Shown: positions 1-62,018 of the stretch, in pieces
Layout of the letters: each line of letters starts with the position of its first letter
How positions within the stretch are numbered: the stretch's first letter is position 1
Assembly (NCBI GenBank): GCA_977017575.1
Contig: CDRNVI010000144.1
Span: 1 to 64,000 of the forward strand
Source: Paramoeba atlantica
Lineage: Eukaryota; Protista; Discosea
Reading direction: 5' to 3'
DNA length: 64,000 bases
Made by a program: the position numbers and the translations under genes
The notes under the pieces: model-generated
The model's database searches: none
What the model saw: the letters and a program-made list of their open reading frames with translations, nothing else
Told to the model about the DNA's origin: nothing

Positions 1-789
1 CCTAAACCCTAAACCCTAAACCCTAAACCCTAAACCCTAAACCCTAAACCCTAAACCCTAAACCCTAAACCCTAAACCCTAAACCCTAAACCCTAAACCC
101 TAAACCCTAAACCCTAAACCCTAAACCCTAAACCCTAAACCCTAAACCCTAAACCCTAAACCCTAAACCCTAAACCCTAAACCCTAAACCCTAAACCCTA
201 AACCCTAAACCCTAAACCCTAAACCCTAAACCCTAAACCCTAAACCCTAAACCCTAAACCCTAAACCCTAAACCCTAAACCCTAAACCCTAAACCCTAAA
301 CCCTAAACCCTAAACCCTAAACCCTAAACCCTAAACCCTAAACCCTAAACCCTAAACCCTAAACCCTAAACCCTAAACCCTAAACCCTAAACCCTAAACC
401 CTAAACCCTAAACCCTAAACCCTAAACCCTAAACCCTAAACCCTAAACCCTAAACCCTAAACCCTAAACCCTAAACCCTAAACCCTAAACCCTAAACCCT
501 AAACCCTAAACCCTAAACCCTAAACCCTAAACCCTAAACCCTAAACCCTAAACCCTAAACCCTAAACCCTAAACCCTAAACCCTAAACCCTAAACCCTAA
601 ACCCTAAACCCTAAACCCTAAACCCTAAACCCTAAACCCTAAACCCTAAACCCTAAACCCTAAACCCTAAACCCTAAACCCTAAACCCTAAACCCTAAAC
701 CCTAAACCCTAAACCCTAAACCCTAAACCCTAAACCCTAAACCCTAAACCCTAAACCCTAAACCCTAAACCCTAACCCCTAACCTCTAA
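1..789. repeat. Telomeric repeat array (CCCTAAA)n / (TTTAGGG)n, chromosome left end
   Basis: Perfect CCCTAAA repeats from 1 to ~775 (about 110 units), then degenerate units (cccctaa, cctctaa) to 789. The C-rich strand is on +, as expected for a left end. Confidence 0.99.
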
Positions 790-913: not shown

Positions 914-3873
914 ACCACTAATTTACATAATCATCATCAAGATCAATTTTCAAAAAAGCATCACTTTCATCAATGGTGCTTTTAGATTCAGTTTCAGGTT
1001 CAATATAATCTTTCAACCAATTTATATTGAAGTATTCAGGGAGAAAAGTCAACATATTAGACATATTATATATTTTAGATTTAAGTTGTACTCTTTAAGA
1101 ACTATAGTCATCCACATATTCATCATCAGATTTATCTTATTTATATTAGTTATCATGGGTGTAAGGGAAATCAATTTCTGCAAATTTGATCTCTTTTGAG
1201 TTTCTACACATTGGTTTGCTTTTCAGTTCATTAAATGGTTCAATATCTTCAGAATAATAATATTTAAGCATTTTCTTTTTCAATGTTTATTCTTTCAATT
1301 TAGAAATTCCAAAAGTATATTCATCAAACAACACACTTAAGCATTAGAAAGTATTTCTTATAATTAGATTATATAATAAAAAACTATTCAAGTTTTTAGC
1401 AAATCCAAGATTAATTGTAGCTCTGGATTTGACATTAATTTTCAATTAAGAATTAACAAAAATATAATCAAAAATATAGTATCCAAAAATATAAATTAAA
1501 TCTATACTTGACTTTACACCATAAAGTTTCTCATAAGGTAATATCTTTTGTTCTTACTTAACAACCATTAAAATTACTTTGTTAGTTATTTTTTCAGCAA
1601 ATTTTCAAAAATTAAGAGGCAATTAAACAATAAAATAAATTGTTTGGGTACAATTTCAGTGAGTTTCATTTGCTTTTTCAACAACACCATTTTTCTTAAG
1701 ACAACTAGAACTAAATTTTCTAATTTCAATTCCTTTCTTTGCACAATATCTTTTAAAATTAGTATTTTTACTAATAAACTCAAAGGCACCATTACATTAA
1801 ATAATTTTTACTTTTACATCAACTTGTTTTTGTAATTTTTGAATCACATTAATGATTGTTCTTCTAGTACAAGATTTTCATTTAATAAATCAAGAAAAAT
1901 TAACATCAAAATAATTTTCAATGATGAATACAGAATAGTAGTTGTAATGATAGAATAGAATAGATTTTTTATGTAAGTTAACATAAAGTATTTCACCACA
2001 TTTCCTCACAATTTTGGTTTCAGTATAATGTGGTTTCTTCTTATTTTTTACAAAGACACAAGCATCATAGATATAATCAAAATCAGCAATCAATTTTTTG
2101 TAATTATTAGATAAACCATGGATAGCTTTTGCTTTGATGGTTTGACAAGTGTCAAAGAGATAGGTCAATCTATCATAATATAACTTCAGTTCTTTTTCAT
2201 ACTTAGGAGTGAGAGTATAGCAAATTCTTTTCAGGTTTGTATTCTTTGATCTTATATATTCATTTACATTAGGTTTTTCAATAATTTTCACATAATAGAC
2301 TTCTTTTACAAAGTGATTAAAGAAAGATATTTAATATAATTTATCTTTGCAGGATTCACTCAAGAGTTCTTCAGAGAGTTTTAAATCAATTTTTTTTCTT
2401 GTTACAAAAACACTATTTTTATCAAAAATCATAGAAACATTCTAATTATCACACATTTAAAACACAAATAACAAATTTATAGTACATTTGGTTACAACAG
2501 AAACATCTTCAAGAGGAGATAGATTTACATTTAATTCAAGGTCTTTTTTCAATTCTACTAGTATTAATTCACCATTTGCTTAAAAAATATATGTAATTTG
2601 ATTAAATTCACATACATTAAAGATATGATTTTCAGAATTCATAATTGAATTGGAAATATTAGAATCAACAATTACATTATCTTTTTGGTTTATTGATTTC
2701 ATTTTCATAATCAGGATATCAATAAATTGAAGCAAAGTGTAAATTTGAAAATTTTTATTTAATATTTCAATTTTTTACTTTTTTTTTGCTTTTTCAAAGG
2801 TATAGAATTCAGTTTTAGTTAATACACCATTGGAAGATCTTTGATAGGATTTATTAGAGCAAGAATTCTTACAATGTCCAGCAAATTCACAATACCAACA
2901 TGCATTAGGACTTTAGGAGGATCATACTAATCAAAGTTTGCTTGAAAGGTAGTATACTTATTGATTCAATAAATAGAGAAAGATTGAAAGTGAAATGAGG
3001 AAAAAATTAAAGTTTGATTTTGAAATTTCCTTTTCAAAGTAGTATATGTTTTCTGTAAGATAACAAGTTCATTATCTTCTTTTCTTTTCATGTTTCTCTC
3101 TATAATAAATTTTTCAGCCTCAATTAATATTTTAAAAACTTATTTATAAATGAATTCTTGAGCTTTAGATTTTTTTACAATCTTCTTAATCATATTATCC
3201 CACTTTGATGCTTTCATTGAGTTCTTTAAATAATCTATTTTTTTCTTTTTAGTTACATCTCCACCAAGTTTCTCATACTTCTCAATTAACAAGTTTAATT
3301 AGAAGTTCATTGCAACAATCATTTTGATTTTTAAAATTCAAAATGTTTTAAGTTCTTTCTTCACCTTCTGCAATTCTCCAAGTTTCTAAGATGAATCATA
3401 AATCCTGTTGAGTGTTTTCATTATTTTTGCAGATTTACCAAGAAATCCATTAGTTATGATTTCCCTTTGTGCCTCTCTTATGAGATTGCTGATGATGAAA
3501 CAGTATATAGTGTAGTGATTTGTTATTTTTATAATATTGATCACTTGATGATTTCTTTTTCTAATATTGAAATCATTAGTATTGTCTACTATTAAGTGGT
3601 GAATCAACTTGAATCAGATCAACTGTATTTTTAATCCAAAGCACCAAGAAGAATAATCACCAATATCATCAAACTTTGTTTCGATATGTTTTAGTATCTT
3701 TTTAATATTCTTGGAATTATATTCAAGTTCAAGATAAGCATTTGCTATCCTTTAAAAAATGCTATATGTGAATAATTCCACATAAGGGTTTGTGAAAGAA
3801 GAGGGGATCTTTTCATGCTCAAAAATTGGTTTTAGCCAAGGCTTAGTTTCAGGGCAAGTCTAAACTTTTAATT
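914..3873 (-). mobile_element. Degenerate Ty1/Copia internal region (gag, protease, gag-pre-integrase, integrase), truncated before RT
   Basis: Minus-strand translation gives a CCHC knuckle CWYCEFAGHCKNSC (~2855-2900), a protease-like DSNISNSIM...ANG...NLLFV segment (~2480-2670), HGL...YDACVFVKNKKKPH...GEILYVNL...FIIENY (ORF 1890-2291), and the integrase core NGAFEFISKNTNFKRYCAKKGIE...KNGVVEKANET...LP...LYGVK...IFG (~1480-1800). It has many stops. Confidence 0.85.
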
Positions 3874-4038: not shown

Positions 4039-4352
4039 TGTACAGCTACTTCTGAACAAAACTAAACAAATGAACAAACAACCAAACTTCTGTAACAAAA
4101 CAAAAAACACGAAAAAGAAAATAATGCACTAAACTAGAATACTAAAGAAGATATTCCTCAAATTGTCTTTAAACACTTTTATTGATCCAATAACTACTTC
4201 TCAAAACAGTTATACTTGAAAGAATTCTCTACAAATCTTTTTTTTCATCACACCTAACCTTTAATCTTCTTAGTAAACCACTTTTAACTTTTTTAACAAA
4301 AACTTGTGCTTTCTCTTTTCTCTTGCAACCCCTGGAGAACTTAATCTGCATA
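4039..4352 (+). repeat. Gypsy 5' LTR
   Basis: Direct repeat of 10600-10913, same length, differing almost only by transitions. Confidence 0.93.
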
Positions 4353-4375
4353 CTTAGCAACACTGTTTTGAACTT

Positions 4376-7300
4376 ATGAACTGTAACACAAACACTGATG
4401 AAACTGTTTTGGATCAAACCACCCTTGGTCAAACAGTTGTGAATGAGAATACAACTCAGCAACAGCCTCAACCAAACTTGAATTTTGGCAATTTTGACCT
4501 TTTAACTATCATCAGCAAGTCTAAACCAAACAAAAAGGTTCCTCTCCCAAAGAACCTTACCCTGTATGAAGCAAAAATCCACAAGACAATTCAAAAATCT
4601 TTTGAATCATTCTTGAACTCAAGTCTCACACCACCTCTTGTAACAGGTGAAAACAGTCAAACACACTTTACCTATTTTCTCTCTAACATCTACTATACAT
4701 GGACTTACAACTTCTGGTTGAACCACAAATTTCTCTTTCAAGTGTTGTCTAAACACTTGAAGTTAAAGAGCTACACCATAGTTGCTATTTCCTTCCAATT
4801 TTTTTAAGATTTTTTAACAGCCATTAACATGGAACTGGGATCCAACAGTTTACTGGTCTCCACAAAGTGGATCATATGGTTAATGTTTGACAATTCAATC
4901 AAACTCTCCCAACACCTTCAAATCTTCTGCCAAGCAGCAGAGAGAGAGTATAAGAGAGGCATACAGTTGACTAACTCTTGAATCTTCCAAACTCTACAAA
5001 ACAAAATCCTCTCCTTACCTTTCTTAGAAGCCTGGCAAGCAGTCAAGAGGTTATCACCTGATCAACCCCCTGAAGAAACAGCTATCTCATATGAGAGCCA
5101 ACCAAAATATCCTTTTATCTGCTCTAATACCACTTCTTCACCCACACTTATACTCCACCTGAACTTTTATGGTCAGAAATTCAAAGATGCAGCACAACAT
5201 CTGCAGCAGTAGATAATATGTTTGGCTTGTGCCAGTACTGATCACTTCTCCCTGAATTGGCCTCAAGTTCTCAGATACTGTGAACAATTTACCAAACTTA
5301 ACAAACACTTCTTTTGTCTATTGCTGCTCCATTCATAGATTCAATATCATCCATGCTGACAAAAATTGTTGAGTGATTACAACTCTGCAAGCTGATAATA
5401 AATCACCTCCATCAAAGAGAAGGTACAAACAACCACCACACAATCCATATAGAAACCCAAATGCTCATGGGAACAATTCTTACAAACCTCTTCACAACAC
5501 TGGAAAACCCTCCACAAAGAAACCACAAACTGAAGAACAACTCATTTGTTCCAAAGTTACTGGCTGCTTTGACTCTACATCTTCAAAAAGCAGCCATACA
5601 ATCTGCTGCTTTGCCTCTACAACAACAACAAACTGTTGCTCAAGCACAACCTGCTATTCAACAAGGTAATGCTAATAAACTTTTCCAAAATTACCCTATT
5701 GTTTTTATTAATATTGAAATTGATAAGAAAATTTCTCTTTTTGATAAACAATATCAGACTGTGTTATACAAACTTAACAGTTGTGAATCAGAAAAGGAAA
5801 TCCCTCACACTCAAATATCTTTCAAATTGTTTTTTTGTAAAGAACACAAAATGCACTGTAGAATGATTGAGAGAACAGCCTATCAGGCACCTGCATCTGC
5901 TCCCTGTGAAGTAGAATTCCAACTGTTGCAGCATCTTCCAACCCAAAACACCCATCCACAAAAAGCTGATAAGGTTACAGCAATAATTGGGTTGCCACTG
6001 GAATTTCAAGCAACTGTGAAAGGCCTCCAAATGGTCACTTGTCTTGATACTGGGGCAGGACTCAATGCTATTAGCTGAGAATTAATACAAAAACATGGAT
6101 TCAAAATTGAGGAAATCAAAGAACTTGAAACTCCATTCTGCATTACAATGGGAAATTCAACTCAAACTCTCACTAAGCAAGCAATTGCAACCACATTTCA
6201 ATTTAAGGAATGCACTGCTAAGTTATGGTTTCTCATTGTTGATCACTTGCCAGTTCAATGCTTAATCAATCAACCAATCTTGCATCACATATAAATTGCA
6301 TATAATCCAAGTGACAACACTATAACTTACAGTGGTAAATTCCAAACACAAGCAAACTCCCCCTCAAATCTCTCTAATCAGATGGATCCACTTACACTTG
6401 AGCATTTAAAGATCTTTAATCATGCAAAATTACTTCATGCCCAAGCTGTGAGGGCAAAGTGTCTACCAAGAGCTTTAAAAACAATAACACTCAAATTAGT
6501 TGGACCTATCACATCACCACAAAGATTCTTTATACTGATAGTCACTGGAAGTGAAAAGTTGCTGGCTTTTCCTGAACTTGTGAACATCTGTAGTGATGAA
6601 GAAATCACACTGTTGGTAGCAAATCCAACAGCACAAACTGTTACCATACCAAACAAAGCTGTGCTTGGAAAAGTTTACATGGTCAATGAATAAAATGTGA
6701 CTGATATAGAGCTCATTGAACTCACAAAAAATCCTATTACAGAAACAAAATTTAATTTCAAGAAGGAAACCCCTTCTCTACTGAAAAAACTAGAACAAAA
6801 CACAAAACACCCAATTGTAATTGGCAGAAAACAAAACCAATCTATCCAAAATAACTCCAAAAGGACAACAAACCCTTTATTAAAAACAAACAATTTGATG
6901 ACATTGGTGAAGAACCAGTTATTCAAATGCTTGTAGCAAAATTGGTAGATTCTCAAAAGCCTACTGATGAATTTGATTCTCTGCAAACTCAGAATCCAGA
7001 ACTTCAACAAGTTTATGATGAGTTTAAAATCAATTCAATAAATTTAACAACTGTTCAAAAAGAAAAATTAGCAACTCTGCTTTACTCTTTCAAAGATCTT
7101 TGAAGTAAAGAAAAAAGAGAAGGACTTCTTGAAAGAACAACCTTTACTTCTCACACAATAGAGGTTGAGGGTCCATCAATTAAACATAATCCTCACAGAA
7201 CAAGTTCAGTTGAAGATTATATCATTTAGCAACACATCAATAAGATGGCACTTCACAAAGTTATTAGACCATCAAAATTGCTTTGGGCTTCACCCATCTA

Positions 7301-58752: not shown

Positions 58753-58824
58753 TCCCCGATAGTATAGTTGGCAAAATCCCCGCCTGTCACGCGGGAGTCC
58801 CGGGTTCGATTCCCGGTCGGGGAG
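58753..58824 (+). tRNA. tRNA-Asp (GTC)
   Basis: Acceptor TCCCCGA/TCGGGGA; anticodon arm CCCGC-CTGTCAC-GCGGG; T arm CCGGG-TTCGATT-CCCGG. Confidence 0.95.
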
Positions 58825-59659
58825 GATTTTTTTCTCTTTCTTTTTATTTTTATTTTTTTTTGTTCAAAAAGATCAAGTGCTATGGTTTTTTCTTTTTTTC
58901 CTTTTTCTTTTTTTTCTCTCCTCTTCTCTTTTTTTTCTATTTTTATTTTTTGATTCTTTCTCCTTTTTTCTGATTTCTTTGAACTCACATCATGAAAAGG
59001 GTCTCTGTTTTGCAAACTCCAATGTGTGTGACTCTATTTGTTGTGAAGGAAGTTAAATTTTGATCATAGTTCAACTTCAATTGGTTTCTTCTGTTGGAAA
59101 GTGAACAATCACCATCTTCACCCTTGACAACAATCATTCTCTTGCCAACAAAAAATTGAAATTTCGTTTCCAGAGCATAGAGTGTATGAAATCTTTTGTT
59201 TTTTCTGATTCACCAGATCAAAAGTTGTTTGAAAACCTTCCTTTCAATGAGTTGTTTCAAAAATTTTGGTCCATTCTCCAATCTCTTTTTCATGAACATC
59301 AATCTCAAAACTACTTTGTTGTGCAATGGAGGAGGGAGGGCCTTTCAGTTTTTGGAGAAAGTCTTTTATCCTTTTTCTGTTTCTTTCCAAGCAATTTGTT
59401 CCCATCCCCCCCCCAAAAAAGTTCTTTTTTTCTGAGACAGAGTCAGCTAAATTTATTCAGCTCACAAATAGAATTTTAAAGAAATGTCTTCGGGGAATTT
59501 CTCCCCCCCCCCCCCCCCCAAAAAAAAAAGAGAAAAACAGAGAAAACCAAATTTTCCCAAAATGAATTTGAGTGTCACACAAACAAACTTCAATTGGAGC
59601 AAAAGAGTGTTTGAGGAAACTTTTTTCTTTTTTTTTTTGAAAATTAAAAAAAAAAAAAA

Positions 59660-59732
59660 AGCCACTAAAGGGGCTCGAACCCTTGACCACTAGGTTAAAA
59701 GCCTAGCGCTCTATCGACTGAGCTATAGTGGC
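59660..59732 (-). tRNA. tRNA-Lys (TTT)
   Basis: Acceptor GCCACTA/TAGTGGC; anticodon arm CTAGG-CTTTTAA-CCTAG; T arm AAGGG-TTCGAGC-CCCTT. The D loop has GA instead of the usual GG. Confidence 0.92.
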
Positions 59733-59935
59733 ATTTGTTGAAAAAAAAGTCAAATTTTTAGTGTGATGGGGGGGGATTGATTTTGATGGAAGAAGGAAAA
59801 AGAAGAAAAAGATATGCAAACAGAAAAAAAAAAAGATTTTTAATTCCTTCTTGGAGCAAAACAACAAAGACAAAAGAAAACCCATTCAGTCAGCGAGATT
59901 TATCTTTTTTTCAACTTTTTTTTCAAAAAAAAAAT

Positions 59936-60008
59936 TGCTCATTACAGGGATCGAACCTGTGACCTCCGCGTTATTAGCACGGCGCTCTACCGACTAAGTT
60001 AAACGAGC
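59936..60008 (-). tRNA. tRNA-Ile (AAT), with an imperfect D stem
   Basis: Acceptor GCTCGTT/AATGAGC; anticodon arm CCGTG-CTAATAA-CGCGG; T arm ACAGG-TTCGATC-CCTGT. The D stem is ACTT/GAGC rather than GCTC/GAGC. Confidence 0.88.
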
Positions 60009-60264
60009 ATTTCTGAAAAATGACCCAATTTTTTGGCTTTCCAGCCAGAAAAATTTCTGGAGAAACAGAAAAACAAAGTGAAAAAACAAAGAAAAGAGCA
60101 GAAAAAGGAAAAAAACAAAAATGAAAAAAGTGATTGGAGAAAATGAAGGTGAAAATCACTTTTTATTGTTAATTGACTCCATTTTTTTTTCTTTTTCAAG
60201 GGAAGGGAAAATCTTTTCAAAAGTAAAATCGAATGATTTTTTTTCATTCAAAAAAAAATAATAG

Positions 60265-60447
60265 ATGTTAATTACGTGTGAGAAAAATGGACTTTAATCG
60301 TCGAGGGTGCTTTTTGCCTCGAGACTTGGATTCTGACGTCGAGGTCCATCAACTTGTTGATGGACAGAGACCCAAAGAATCCAAGTCGAGAAAGGAAAAA
60401 AGCACCAGAGACTTGATTGACCATTTTTCTCACACGTGATTCAACAT
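60265..60447. other. ~180-bp interrupted palindrome (fold-back) immediately left of the recombinase unit
   Basis: Nested pairs: acgtgtgagaaaaatgg/ccatttttctcacacgt, ggtgcttttt/aaaaagcacc, gacttggattct/agaatccaagtc and gtccatcaac/gttgatggac with a 2-nt loop. Confidence 0.92.
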
Positions 60448-61833
60448 TTAATCATCTTTTCCATGCTGCAAAGGAATTTTCAAAAAAAAGTTTTCTTGGA
60501 AATTAATCATTCATGTTGGTTGTCACAATTATTTGATTTTCTTTTCATTTTCATTTTTTCAAAAATGGCGCAACACCAAATGTCAACTCGAGAGGAAAGA
60601 CGAAGGAGGGTTGAAAATGGGGTCCCTGACCATGCAAAAGCCCTGACTGTTGACAACTGTGGGTTTGATCGATCTCGTAGGGCTGTTGAAGACTTTTTCG
60701 ATCGACGAACCCCAGCACCAACAAGACGAGCAGTTCTCCATGCGGGTGCGTGTTTCGAAAACTTTCTTCAGCTGAAGACAGATGCTGGGTTGGATTATTC
60801 AATTAACGAAAAACTTTTAATTGAGTTTTTTGAGTTGTATCTCTGGTATTTGATCCACCCCCGAACACACGTGTGTGTCTTTGACTGTGGATCTTTTTTT
60901 CCAATCGTTGCATACACAAAACGGTTCATCTACCTAAAATACGCGGTTGACCTTGGGCCGTGTCGTGAACTCAACAGACTCTTGAAAAAGGAAACCTTTG
61001 GGCACCAACCAATGAAAAAGGAAATCTTCACTCTTGAGGAGTTGACCAAGTTTGTGGAACGGAAACCGCAAGATGGAGGAGAAAGACAAGAGTCCCTTTT
61101 GGTGCTGTGTTCCTTTTTTGGTTTGGGACGATCTGCTGAGGTCATCATGATGACGAAAGAAACTGTTTTGGTGAAAAGCGATTCTGTTGTTTTTTCTCTT
61201 TTCCATTGTGCGAAGTCAAGGACCTTTCGAACCACAAAAGTTGTTGTCCCAAATGTTGGAAAGTTCGATACCGCTCGTGAATTTGCTGCCCACCTGGCTT
61301 CAATTCCTGACAAACCTCGTTTGTGGTGGACCTGGAGACAAGGGAAGTTTGTTGAGCAACCAATGGGGAAGAACCAAATCACAGTGATTGCAAAGAAGGT
61401 TGCACTCTTTCTGCAGAAAGATCCTCCACTGTATGCTTCACACTCTTTCCGCCGATCCGGGGCTACAGCAATGGTTGAAGGGGGAGCCTCCACTGATCAA
61501 CTGATGGTGTCTGGGGCTTGGGCTTCCCAACGTGTTGCACATGGTTATATTCAAGATTCTGACCGAGCTGCCAGAGAAAGAACAGAGATCTTGACTTCAA
61601 CTTCTTCAAGTTCTCAATCGAGCTCATCTTCTGGGGTTCAACTGACCATTAATTTGGGAGATCTTGTCTCTCGAGAGAGGTTGGGTCATTAATGTTAATG
61701 AGCAATGTCAACAATAAATACTGATAATGTTTTGAAATTCAATTATTTTTCATAATTGCAAGGGAACAAAAGACCATTTATTTCTGAATTTGGGCAAACT
61801 CAGTGAGTTTGCTGCATGGAAAAGATGATTAAA
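60447..61833 (+). mobile_element. Tyrosine-recombinase unit bounded by 26-bp inverted repeats (Crypton-like)
   Basis: tttaatcatcttttccatgctgcaaa (60447-60472) versus tttgctgcatggaaaagatgattaaa (61808-61833), one mismatch. There is an additional palindrome gcaaactca-g-tgagtttgc at 61794-61812. Confidence 0.7.
60565..61692 (+). CDS. Tyrosine recombinase (phage-integrase fold), intronless, ~375 aa from the probable ATG at 60565
   Basis: The catalytic set is intact: GLGRSAEV (R), AKSRTF (K), HSFRRSGAT (HxxR), SGAWAS (W) and HGYIQDS (Y). Confidence 0.93.
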   Translation: MAQHQMSTREERRRRVENGVPDHAKALTVDNCGFDRSRRAVEDFFDRRTPAPTRRAVLHAGACFENFLQLKTDAGLDYSINEKLLIEFFELYLWYLIHPRTHVCVFDCGSFFPIVAYTKRFIYLKYAVDLGPCRELNRLLKKETFGHQPMKKEIFTLEELTKFVERKPQDGGERQESLLVLCSFFGLGRSAEVIMMTKETVLVKSDSVVFSLFHCAKSRTFRTTKVVVPNVGKFDTAREFAAHLASIPDKPRLWWTWRQGKFVEQPMGKNQITVIAKKVALFLQKDPPLYASHSFRRSGATAMVEGGASTDQLMVSGAWASQRVAHGYIQDSDRAARERTEILTSTSSSSQSSSSSGVQLTINLGDLVSRERLGH

Positions 61834-61901
61834 GAAAAAATTGTTTTCAGGCAAAAAAAAAAAGAGGAAAAAATTCAAAAACAAAACAAAGAAAAAAAAT
61901 T

Positions 61902-61985
61902 CGTCAGAAGCAGGATTTGAACCTACGCCCCGTTTCCAGGATGTGATTTCTAGTCACACGTCTTAGACCACTCGACCATTCCGAC
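61902..61985 (-). tRNA. tRNA-Ser (AGA)
   Basis: Acceptor GTCGGAA/TTCTGAC; anticodon arm TGTGA-CTAGAAA-TCACA; long variable arm CCTG-GAAA-CGGG; T arm GTAGG-TTCAAAT-CCTGC. Confidence 0.95.
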
Positions 61986-62018
61986 ATTTCATAAAAAATA
62001 AATGAAAAAAAGGAAAGG

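What the first reader, a model, noticed from the sequence alone, without database searches (positions are those of the whole stretch)
60265..61985. Intact tyrosine recombinase between inverted repeats, embedded in a tRNA cluster
Seen: a complete R-K-HxxR-W-Y ORF bounded by 26-bp inverted repeats (one mismatch), with tRNA-Ile ~260 bp before the left palindrome and tRNA-Ser 69 bp after the right repeat; there is no RT and no evident TSD. Known: Cryptons are eukaryotic YR-only DNA transposons, and HSFRRSxAT...GxWxS..VA.GYI.DS resembles the non-fungal Crypton-type YRs; prokaryotic YR elements favour tRNA genes. Inferred: this may be a compact, possibly active, tRNA-targeted YR element, or an invertible segment, since inverted sites would give inversion rather than excision.
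Basis: partly seen in the sequence, partly recalled or inferred. Interest (0 to 1): 0.8.

Follow-up and report, generated by a model that had tools for sequence, protein, structure and literature searches.

The report
Crypton-like transposon with giant hairpin
A 1.6-kb jumping gene that encodes only a Cre-like recombinase sits between two tRNA genes of a protist-like eukaryote. When its two ends are joined they form one long DNA hairpin, and relatives from other protists and from insects share this layout, which gives a concrete, testable picture of how this poorly understood class of transposons may move.

Summary
There is an intact 375-aa tyrosine recombinase at 60565-61692, with R189, K217, H293, R296, W319 and Y328 and a Cre-like fold. 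It is flanked by a 26-nt inverted repeat with one mismatch, and tRNA-Ile lies 256 nt before and tRNA-Ser 68 nt after.

The mobile unit is 60257-61832. A 99% identical, frameshifted copy with unrelated flanks (L002) fixes these ends. The unit includes the 190-bp palindrome, so the left repeat is internal and only the right repeat is terminal. It is a Crypton-type element: recombinase only, no reverse transcriptase.

tRNA targeting is not supported, because none of 15 related loci holds a tRNA. An invertible segment is not supported either, because every copy has the same orientation.

The new result is the layout: AATAG terminus, ~140-190-bp bulged palindrome, left repeat, gene, terminal right repeat. 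It recurs in all 10 related element lineages examined, down to 26% protein identity, including firefly and mealybug elements. Joining the ends gives one 200-305-nt hairpin (z -10 to -21), and in five of six lineages the junction lies beside a bulge. This resembles folded recombination sites such as CTX-phage attP(+), but that reading is inferred.

Another scan note (s1-389384) describes a probable second copy elsewhere in this genome; I did not check it.

The parts
60257..61832 (+). Whole mobile unit (1,576 bp), a Crypton-type transposon copy
   Evidence: It is 98.99% identical to L002:3678-5262, and the flanks diverge at both ends. L001 shares the same right end.
60257..60264 (+). Left terminus AATAATAG, the family-wide (A)ATAG terminus. 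It becomes the unpaired bulge beside the junction when the two ends are joined.
   Evidence: Alignment with L002. The same motif starts L006, L007, L011/L012 and the firefly copies. Fold of the joined ends.
60265..60447 (+). Imperfect palindrome of about 183 bp, centred near 60354/60355
   Evidence: the repeat finder pair I8. DNA fold -54.7 kcal/mol, z -10.5 and -9.5 on the other strand. 19 of 68 pairs show compensatory changes among the window, L003 and L005.
60302..60412 (+). Six top-strand CGAGG / (C)GAGAC motifs at 60302, 60320, 60340, 60366, 60387 and 60407, spaced 18-26 nt. They occupy the internal loops of the hairpin.
   Evidence: The same strand bias is seen in every relative's palindrome: 2-8 motifs on the top strand against 0-2 on the bottom strand.
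60448..60472 (+). Left inverted repeat (internal), directly after the palindrome
60565..61692 (+). Tyrosine recombinase gene: 375 aa plus stop; R189, K217, H293, R296, W319, Y328
61808..61832 (+). Right inverted repeat, ending at the right terminus of the element (...GATGATTAA)
59935..60009 (-). tRNA-Ile(AAT). Neighbour, not part of the element.
61901..61986 (-). tRNA-Ser(AGA). Neighbour, not part of the element.

Best explanation
Window 60257-61832 is one copy of an autonomous Crypton-type DNA transposon in a eukaryotic nuclear genome. The host has (CCCTAAA)n telomere repeats at the window start and eukaryote-type tRNA anticodons. The element's only gene encodes a Cre-like tyrosine recombinase.

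Shown:
- The ends of the unit.
- It exists in at least two nearly identical copies with different flanks, plus older broken copies.
- The recombinase evolves under purifying selection.
- A fixed layout is conserved from protist to insect relatives: (A)ATAG terminus, bulged palindrome of about 140-190 bp, left repeat, gene, right repeat at the very end.

Inferred:
- The element leaves the chromosome as a circle and re-enters A/T-rich DNA by recombinase-mediated strand exchange at the point where its two ends meet (61832 joined to 60257).
- In that joined form the right repeat pairs with the left repeat and the two palindrome arms pair with each other. About 250 nt can then fold into one long hairpin, or a cruciform in supercoiled DNA.
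- The exchange point then lies at the 5' edge of an 8-nt bulge between two helices that carry related half-sites.
- My preferred reading is that this folded form, not plain duplex DNA, is the recombination site. I give it about 0.35 on its own. It would work like the folded attP(+) of phage CTX or integron attC sites, where one pair of strands is exchanged and replication finishes the job.

The position between two tRNA genes is most likely incidental: an A/T-rich intergenic spacer.
For: Ends and copies. L002 is 99% identical over 60257-61840 with unrelated flanks and a 1-nt insertion. L001 is 76-84% identical with the same right end.

Eukaryotic host.

Recombinase: (catalytic residues; the best fold matches are all Cre). 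There is no reverse-transcriptase domain in the element or in the long relatives.

Selection: dN/dS is 0.076 against L001 and 0.20 between L006 and L007.

Conserved layout:
- L003, L005
- L006, L007, L008
- L009, L010, L011
- Three 99.8-99.9% identical firefly copies, L123-L125
The loci examined fall in three separated clades of the tree. The large clade is made of insect proteins.

Unit-length contigs L006 and L012 begin at (A)ATAG and end at ...AAA(A).

Joined ends fold into one hairpin in 6 of 6 lineages tested, with dG -56 to -114 kcal/mol and z -10 to -21. The junction lies at a 4-9-nt 5' bulge in 5 of the 6.

Pairing is kept while the sequence changes. 19 of 68 palindrome pairs are compensatory. 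The 25-57-nt repeats differ between lineages but stay 80-100% complementary within each.

Published work on CTX phage describes two inverted site pairs that fold back into a hairpin stem with an unpaired overlap region and exchange a single pair of strands (PMC3442271).
Against: - No circle junction, empty site or excision event was seen.
- Folding is predicted, not observed. A plain duplex site (right end, spacer, left end with related half-sites) would give the same junction. The half-site resemblance is strong in L003 and L007 but only moderate in this window (about 7 of 12 positions, read).
- In the firefly element the junction lies within continuous stem, with only a 1-nt and a 3-nt bulge nearby and no large bulge.
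- The mealybug locus L009 has overlapping arms and is less clear.
- Palindromy could in principle be kept by a copying or repair process rather than by selection.
- This copy carries four derived amino-acid changes, so it may not be the active master.
- No source of single-stranded DNA is known for such an element in a eukaryote.
Confidence: 0.8

Rival explanations
1. The palindrome and the two repeats work at the RNA level. This could be a long 5' hairpin plus pairing of the 5' and 3' untranslated regions that controls translation, stability or small-RNA production from the recombinase transcript, while recombination uses only short duplex sites at the ends.
For: The purine-rich CGAGG/GAGAC loop motifs lie on the sense strand in every lineage. 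Both repeats lie in the likely untranslated regions. The only Rfam hit is a weak microRNA-precursor-like match, E 0.68.
Against: The hairpin starts 8 nt from the left terminus, so the element has no room for its own promoter upstream of it. The right repeat ends exactly at the DNA terminus, which points to a DNA role. No RNA run was shown to hold the element.
Confidence: 0.12
2. An invertible gene cassette. The recombinase flips the segment between the two inverted repeats (60448-61832) as an on/off or orientation switch.
For: Inverted sites give inversion with Cre- or FLP-type enzymes. The repeat pair is highly significant.
Against: The orientation of the gene relative to the palindrome is the same in the window, L002, L003, L005-L011 and L123-L125. 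The right repeat coincides with the end of a unit that is found at different genomic places.
Confidence: 0.04
3. A tRNA-targeted integrating element, in the manner of bacterial integrases or of eukaryotic elements that seek tRNA genes.
For: This copy lies inside a 3.2-kb cluster of four tRNA genes, 256 nt and 68 nt from its two neighbours. Another scan note reports a recombinase retroelement inside a tRNA-Thr gene of this genome (s1-381649, not checked).
Against: There is no tRNA gene in any of 15 related loci, including the 99% identical copy L002 and the three firefly copies. The neighbouring tRNAs are complete, no tRNA fragment is repeated at the ends, and the immediate flanks are A/T runs.
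Confidence: 0.05
4. A plasmid-like episome in the style of the yeast 2-micron circle. It would be a small circle whose inverted repeats let the recombinase flip one half to amplify copy number. The periodic CGAGR motifs of the palindrome would serve as an origin or partition site, and the chromosomal copies would be accidents.
For: In the circular form the two repeats divide the molecule into two segments, as in 2-micron-type plasmids. There are six evenly spaced direct motifs. Unit-length contigs exist in two short-read assemblies.
Against: All copies with flanks are chromosomal insertions. There is a single gene and no replication or partition protein. Unit-length contigs are equally expected for a dispersed repeat.
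Confidence: 0.04
5. A domesticated host recombinase gene, not a transposon.
For: The ORF is intact and under purifying selection.
Against: There are several copies, including frameshifted and truncated ones, in different flanks. Terminal structures are conserved and end exactly at the copy boundaries. The firefly has three 99.8-99.9% identical copies.
Confidence: 0.02

Closest known systems
Crypton DNA transposons, especially the animal groups CryptonA/CryptonI (Goodwin 2003; Kojima and Jurka 2011, PMC3212892)
   Same: The host is a eukaryote. The recombinase is the only enzyme and has no C-terminal extra domain. There are no true terminal inverted or long direct repeats and no target-site duplication. 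The nearest named relatives are multi-copy insect proteins. Published non-autonomous CryptonI derivatives keep 438 bp of the 5' end and 260 bp of the 3' end, which fits a need for the structures found here.
   Different: The literature I could read states that Cryptons lack terminal repeats, and that no repeats were found in animal Cryptons. Here a conserved set of cis structures is present: the AATAG terminus, a bulged palindrome, and a repeat pair with one internal and one terminal arm. At 1.6 kb the element is much smaller than the 3-7 kb I recall for fungal Cryptons (not checked here). Placement against reference Crypton sequences could not be tested.
Phage CTX attP(+) and other elements that exploit Xer recombinases (PMC3442271)
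   Same: There are two inverted site pairs on one molecule that can fold back into the stem of a hairpin. The overlap region is unpaired. The crossover point is sharply defined with no duplication. After integration both site pairs stay together at one end of the element.
   Different: CTX is a bacterial single-stranded phage that uses host recombinases. Here the host is a eukaryote and the element carries its own recombinase. No single-stranded stage is known, and single-strand exchange has not been shown.
Integron integrase with folded attC sites (PDB 2A3V; PMC4792948)
   Same: The site is a bulged hairpin whose asymmetry marks one strand. The integron integrase is among the structural matches to the recombinase model (ranks 47-48).
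   Different: attC hairpins are 60-140 nt and are recognised through extrahelical bases. Here the stem is 200-305 nt with regularly spaced purine-rich internal loops. Cre is a much better fold match than IntI.
Cre/loxP
   Same: Cre is the best structural match over both domains, with the same catalytic set including the tryptophan in place of the third histidine.
   Different: Sequence identity is only 12-14%. loxP is a simple 34-bp duplex site, and Cre is not a transposase.
DIRS1-type recombinase retrotransposons (inverted terminal repeats plus an internal complementary region)
   Same: The recombinases are related. Internal sequences complementary to the ends are thought to bring the ends together into a circle.
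   Different: DIRS elements encode reverse transcriptase and RNase H and move through RNA. This element has neither.

Membership tests
Crypton | Tyrosine recombinase is the only enzyme; no reverse transcriptase and no DDE transposase | tested here: met
   There is a single meaningful ORF in 60257-61832. Pfam finds only PF00589. Long relatives carry no reverse-transcriptase domain.
Crypton | Complete catalytic residues of a tyrosine recombinase | tested here: met
   R189, K217, H293, R296, W319 and Y328 are present. The model has a Cre-like fold.
Crypton | Dispersed copies in a eukaryotic nuclear genome | tested here: met
   Telomere repeats and eukaryote-type tRNA anticodons mark the host as eukaryotic. 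Copies L002, L001 and L004 have different flanks. L007 carries a GT..AG intron.
Crypton | No terminal inverted repeats or long direct repeats; short (4-6 bp) direct repeats at the termini as crossover sites | tested here: inconclusive
   There are no true terminal inverted repeats, because the left arm is 191 nt inside the element. The string shared by the two junctions is 3 nt here (TAA), 7 nt in L002 and L003, and 4 nt in L007 (read). All are A/T-rich, so chance cannot be excluded.
Crypton | Recombinase groups with a named Crypton group (F, S, A, I) in a tree | not testable with these tools
   No reference Crypton sequences were available. The protein is sister to a clade of multi-copy insect proteins. 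DUF3504, which I take to be the Pfam family of CryptonA-derived domains, does not match.
Crypton | Excision as a circle and reintegration | not testable with these tools
DIRS / Ngaro / VIPER recombinase retrotransposons | Reverse transcriptase and RNase H genes; inverted terminal repeats with an internal complementary region, or split direct repeats | tested here: not met
   There is no such ORF or domain. The unit is only 1,576 bp.
tRNA-targeted integrating element | Insertion at a fixed place in or next to tRNA genes in most copies | tested here: not met
   0 of 15 related loci hold a tRNA gene.
Site-specific invertible segment | A fixed chromosomal segment found in both orientations between inverted sites | tested here: not met
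   One orientation is seen in all copies and relatives, and the segment is part of a mobile unit. Reads at this locus could not be examined.
Folded-substrate recombination sites (CTX attP(+), integron attC) | Two inverted site halves that fold into a stem with an unpaired overlap region at the crossover point | tested here: met
   The joined ends fold into one hairpin in 6 of 6 lineages. The junction lies at a 4-9-nt bulge in 5 of the 6. This is a prediction from sequence only.
Folded-substrate recombination sites (CTX attP(+), integron attC) | Single-stranded or extruded substrate, exchange of one strand pair, resolution by replication | not testable with these tools
   This needs biochemistry or in vivo assays.
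2-micron-type plasmids | Autonomous circular replicon with replication and partition functions and long inverted repeats that carry the recombinase target | tested here: not met
   There is a single gene. All copies with flanks are chromosomal.

The most novel reading that the evidence does not exclude
A large, ancient group of eukaryotic Crypton-type transposons, running from protists to beetles and a mealybug, uses a folded DNA substrate. After the two ends are joined, a hairpin or cruciform of 200-305 nt presents the recombination site. The recombinase exchanges only one strand pair at the edge of the bulge, and replication completes the insertion. This would be a eukaryotic counterpart of integron attC and CTX-phage attP(+) recombination. 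The evenly spaced sense-strand CGAGG/GAGAC loops would be a recognition or stabilising code for that folded form.
Probability: 0.3. Interest if true: 0.85.

Novelty: new variant of a known kind. Interest (0 to 1): 0.62.

Why it matters
As far as I know, Cryptons are the least understood class of eukaryotic DNA transposons. I found no report of a demonstrated transposition reaction. The literature describes them as lacking terminal structures, which makes them hard to delimit and annotate.

The conserved signature found here is the AATAG start, the bulged palindrome, and a repeat pair with one internal and one terminal arm. It has three uses:
- It gives a practical rule for finding exact element ends and non-autonomous derivatives.
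- It predicts the exact crossover point.
- It turns the mechanism into simple experiments: recombinase plus folded versus duplex junction DNA, and compensatory mutations in the stems.

If the folded-site reading holds, hairpin-based recombination by tyrosine recombinases, so far a bacterial speciality, would extend to eukaryotes. A 1.6-kb self-contained recombinase-and-site module from a eukaryote could also interest tool builders.

Tried and rejected
No test for inversion, circles or empty sites was possible. One local script used the whole window file as a BLAST subject on the closed machine.
- RNA evidence. No RNA run was shown to hold the element.
- More relatives from metagenome contigs. 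A9 found nothing. A DNA pattern for the conserved left end gave 110 loci, none with a recombinase, so these were chance hits.
- RNA families. Rfam gave only the four tRNAs at gathering scores and one weak microRNA-like hit on the palindrome.
- Solved structures. The sequence search of solved structures returned nothing at E <= 1.
- Palindrome alignment. A joint MAFFT/RNAalifold alignment of six palindromes failed with no consensus. A three-sequence alignment worked.
- Other copies in the window. There is no other copy of the element or its palindrome; other inverted repeats are low-complexity runs.
- Protelomerase-like hairpin-telomere idea. Rejected: the best fold match is Cre, the palindrome centre is not conserved between lineages, and integrated copies keep the palindrome whole at one end.
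- Flip-flop inversion of the palindrome interior. Rejected: the strand bias of the loop motifs is the same in all lineages.
- Prior literature. The held papers gave no description of hairpins or cruciforms in Cryptons.
Full report
WHAT IS THERE. The window starts with (CCCTAAA)n telomere repeats. It holds four tRNA genes with eukaryote-type anticodons in a 3.2-kb cluster at 58753-61986. It is open from 60436, its first ATG is at 60565 and its stop is at 61690-61692, giving 375 aa. Pfam recognises only the C-terminal part of the phage-integrase domain, below its cut-off (E 4.5e-4). The family context is clear all the same: 1,547 relatives at E <= 1e-3. R189, H293, R296, W319 and Y328 are nearly invariant in a 51-sequence alignment. 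K217 lies in the expected hairpin and is invariant in the small alignment A9. The AlphaFold model (pLDDT 88, pTM 0.82) has 30 Cre chains as its best structural matches, aligned over both domains (E down to 5e-11, TM 0.63-0.73). The 26-nt inverted repeat (60447-60472 / 61808-61833, one mismatch) is real and is not expected by chance. So is the palindrome to its left (z -10.5 and -9.5).

WHERE THE ELEMENT ENDS. Five close relatives of the protein were found, four of them on contigs of one long-read metagenome assembly. Contig L002 carries a copy that is 98.99% identical to window 60257-61840, and the sequence outside it is unrelated. L001 carries an older copy (76-84% identical) with the same right end. 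The shared sequence starts at AATAATAG (60257) and stops at ...GATGATTAA (61832). The next base is A here but T in L002 and L001. The mobile unit is therefore 1,576 bp and includes the palindrome. The left repeat arm lies 191 nt inside the element, and only the right arm is terminal. There is no target-site duplication. The two junctions share TAA here and 7 nt in L002, all in A/T-rich sequence.

IS IT ALIVE? The L002 copy differs by 12 substitutions and a 1-nt insertion after 61113, which breaks its frame. The window copy is intact. The gene diverged from the L001 copy at dN/dS 0.076, as expected when only functional copies give offspring. Most differences between the window and L002 are CpG against TpG or CpA. 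With L001 as outgroup, the window copy is the derived one at 60751, 60836, 61169 and 61205. Together with the matching protein differences this gives R63C, S91L, T149M and R214H. The copy is therefore young and complete but slightly decayed, and its activity is open.

WHAT KIND OF ELEMENT. It has one gene and no reverse transcriptase. The long relatives also have none. The host is a eukaryote, and the copies are dispersed and partly broken. These are the features of a Crypton (PMC3212892). In a tree of 51 relatives the window protein sits in a well-supported clade of unnamed metagenome proteins. Another part of the tree is filled with multi-copy proteins of beetles, a wasp and a mealybug, which is where insect Cryptons would be expected.

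tRNA targeting: none of the 15 related loci, including the 99% identical copy and three firefly copies, holds a tRNA gene. The two neighbouring tRNAs are whole, and the immediate flanks are A runs. One copy in a tRNA cluster is not enough to show targeting. Inversion: the gene has the same orientation relative to the palindrome in every copy and relative examined, and the right repeat ends exactly where the mobile unit ends. The repeats therefore belong to the transposon's end structure.

THE NEW RESULT: A CONSERVED LAYOUT. I fetched the DNA around ever more distant relatives and found the same order of parts each time.
- A terminus reading (A)ATAG.
- Directly after it, an imperfect palindrome of 140-190 bp.
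- Directly after that, the left repeat arm.
- Then the gene, and the right repeat arm at the very end.

This holds for:
- L003 (49% protein identity) and L005 (about 40%; palindrome only, no repeat pair found).
- L006 and L007 (37% and 35%; repeats of 56-57 nt) and L008 (30%; the contig ends before the right end).
- L010 and L011 (33% and 26%) and the mealybug locus L009 (29%; arms overlap, less clear).
- Three 99.8-99.9% identical copies of a 1,767-bp firefly element, L123-L125.

In the firefly, similarity between L123 and L125 drops from 99.8% to about 89% exactly at the AATAG start. The 14-nt right arm ends exactly where the flanks diverge. Two short-read contigs, L006 and L012, begin at (A)ATAG and end at ...AAA(A). 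They are unit-length elements, as expected for a dispersed repeat. The loci examined lie in three separate clades of the tree, so the layout is probably ancestral to the whole group. Every palindrome is far more stable than shuffled sequence (z -4.6 for L010, otherwise -10 to -13).

PAIRING IS WHAT IS CONSERVED. The repeat arms differ in sequence between lineages beyond the first 6-10 nt, yet they stay 80-100% complementary within each element over 14-57 nt. Among the window, L003 and L005, 19 of 68 palindrome pairs show changes on both sides that keep the pair. The palindromes are interrupted at regular steps of about 21 nt by internal loops. These loops read CGAGG or (C)GAGAC on the sense strand. 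There are six such motifs here (60302-60412) and 2-8 in each relative, against 0-2 on the other strand. The role of these motifs is unexplained. They could be protein sites on one face of the helix, or purine-purine mismatches that shape a folded strand.

WHAT HAPPENS WHEN THE ENDS ARE JOINED. The accepted model for Cryptons is excision as a circle. If the right end is joined to the left end, the right arm pairs with the left arm and the two palindrome arms pair with each other. The result is a single hairpin of 197-305 nt, with dG -56 to -114 kcal/mol and z -10 to -21, in all six lineages where both ends are known. In five of the six the junction lies at, or within one base of, the 5' edge of a 4-9-nt bulge that holds the (A)ATAG motif. 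That bulge faces 0-5 nt on the other side. In the firefly the junction lies within continuous stem, with only a 1-nt and a 3-nt bulge nearby. Read as duplex DNA, the junction has the classical form of a recombinase site: related half-sites in inverted order around a spacer. This is clear in L007 (about 11 of 13 positions) and L003 (10 of 10), and moderate here. A second such site with a different spacer lies on the other side of the palindrome. Two inverted site pairs that fold back into a stem with an unpaired overlap region is how the attP(+) site of phage CTX is described. That site exchanges a single strand pair and leaves resolution to replication (PMC3442271). Integron attC sites work in a similar way.

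MY READING AND ITS LIMITS.
- Shown: the element, its ends, its family, the conserved layout and the maintenance of pairing.
- Inferred: the circle, the crossover at 61832/60257, and the idea that the folded form (a hairpin on single-stranded DNA, or a cruciform on a supercoiled circle) is the true substrate.

Long stems kept by compensatory change are hard to explain if only 13-bp duplex half-sites mattered. That is why I prefer the folded reading over a plain duplex site. But it is a prediction from sequence, the half-site match in this window is modest, and no single-stranded stage is known. An RNA-level role of the same structures is the main rival. It is weakened by the hairpin starting 8 nt from the DNA terminus and by the right arm ending at the terminus.

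COMPARISON WITH WHAT IS KNOWN. The papers I could read say that Cryptons have neither terminal inverted repeats nor long direct repeats. They also say that 50 copies of an insect Crypton showed no terminal repeats. That agrees with what is seen here in the strict sense, because one arm is internal. It would also explain why the layout went unnoticed. No paper in the held library links Cryptons with hairpins, stem-loops or cruciforms. I therefore rate the element itself as a new member of a known kind, and the conserved end structure as a new variant worth testing.

Noticed in passing
window 60618-61731 against L002: Most differences between the two 99% identical copies are CpG against TpG or CpA. 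This is the signature of deamination of methylated cytosine, so the element is probably CpG-methylated in this organism. Other scan notes report a TET/JBP dioxygenase and a methyltransferase-like gene in this window (s1-369854, not checked).
   Followed up: partly
L001:3941-4911: A different recombinase paralogue (about 30% identical) is fused head-to-tail to a copy of this family that lacks its left end, giving a chimeric ORF at 4177-4908. This could be one Crypton inserted into another or recombination between the two. The copy also has a 60-bp in-frame deletion near L001:5410.
   Followed up: partly
L123 and L125, 2079-2433: Two of the three firefly copies abut the same older repeat (about 89% alike) at exactly the same point on their left side, while their right flanks differ. 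This may be a preferred target inside another repeat family.
   Followed up: partly
L007:1717-1760: The recombinase gene of this relative carries a short GT..AG intron, and the gene caller's protein P0008 reads into it. The proteins of L006 and L007 have an N-terminal basic stretch with a C-x2-C-x-G-C motif that the window protein lacks.
   Followed up: no
L006:1760-1830 and L007:2150-2240: There are several copies of a TGCAATAAAAT-like motif, in both orientations, between the stop codon and the right repeat. These may be accessory binding sites.
   Followed up: no
window 1-600 and 2911-3836; L002:5719-6698: The window begins with (CCCTAAA)n telomere repeats, so the element is about 60 kb from a chromosome end. 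The flank of the L002 copy is 79% similar to window 2911-3836, so that copy also lies in subtelomere-like sequence.
   Followed up: no
A highly conserved tRNA is a likely reason for the filter to trip. Nothing else was done with it.
   Followed up: no
window 60272-60439, both strands: The two 53-aa ORFs listed on opposite strands of the palindrome mirror each other and are by-products of the palindrome, not genes. The 187-aa ORF antisense to the recombinase (60930-61493) has no support either.
   Followed up: no
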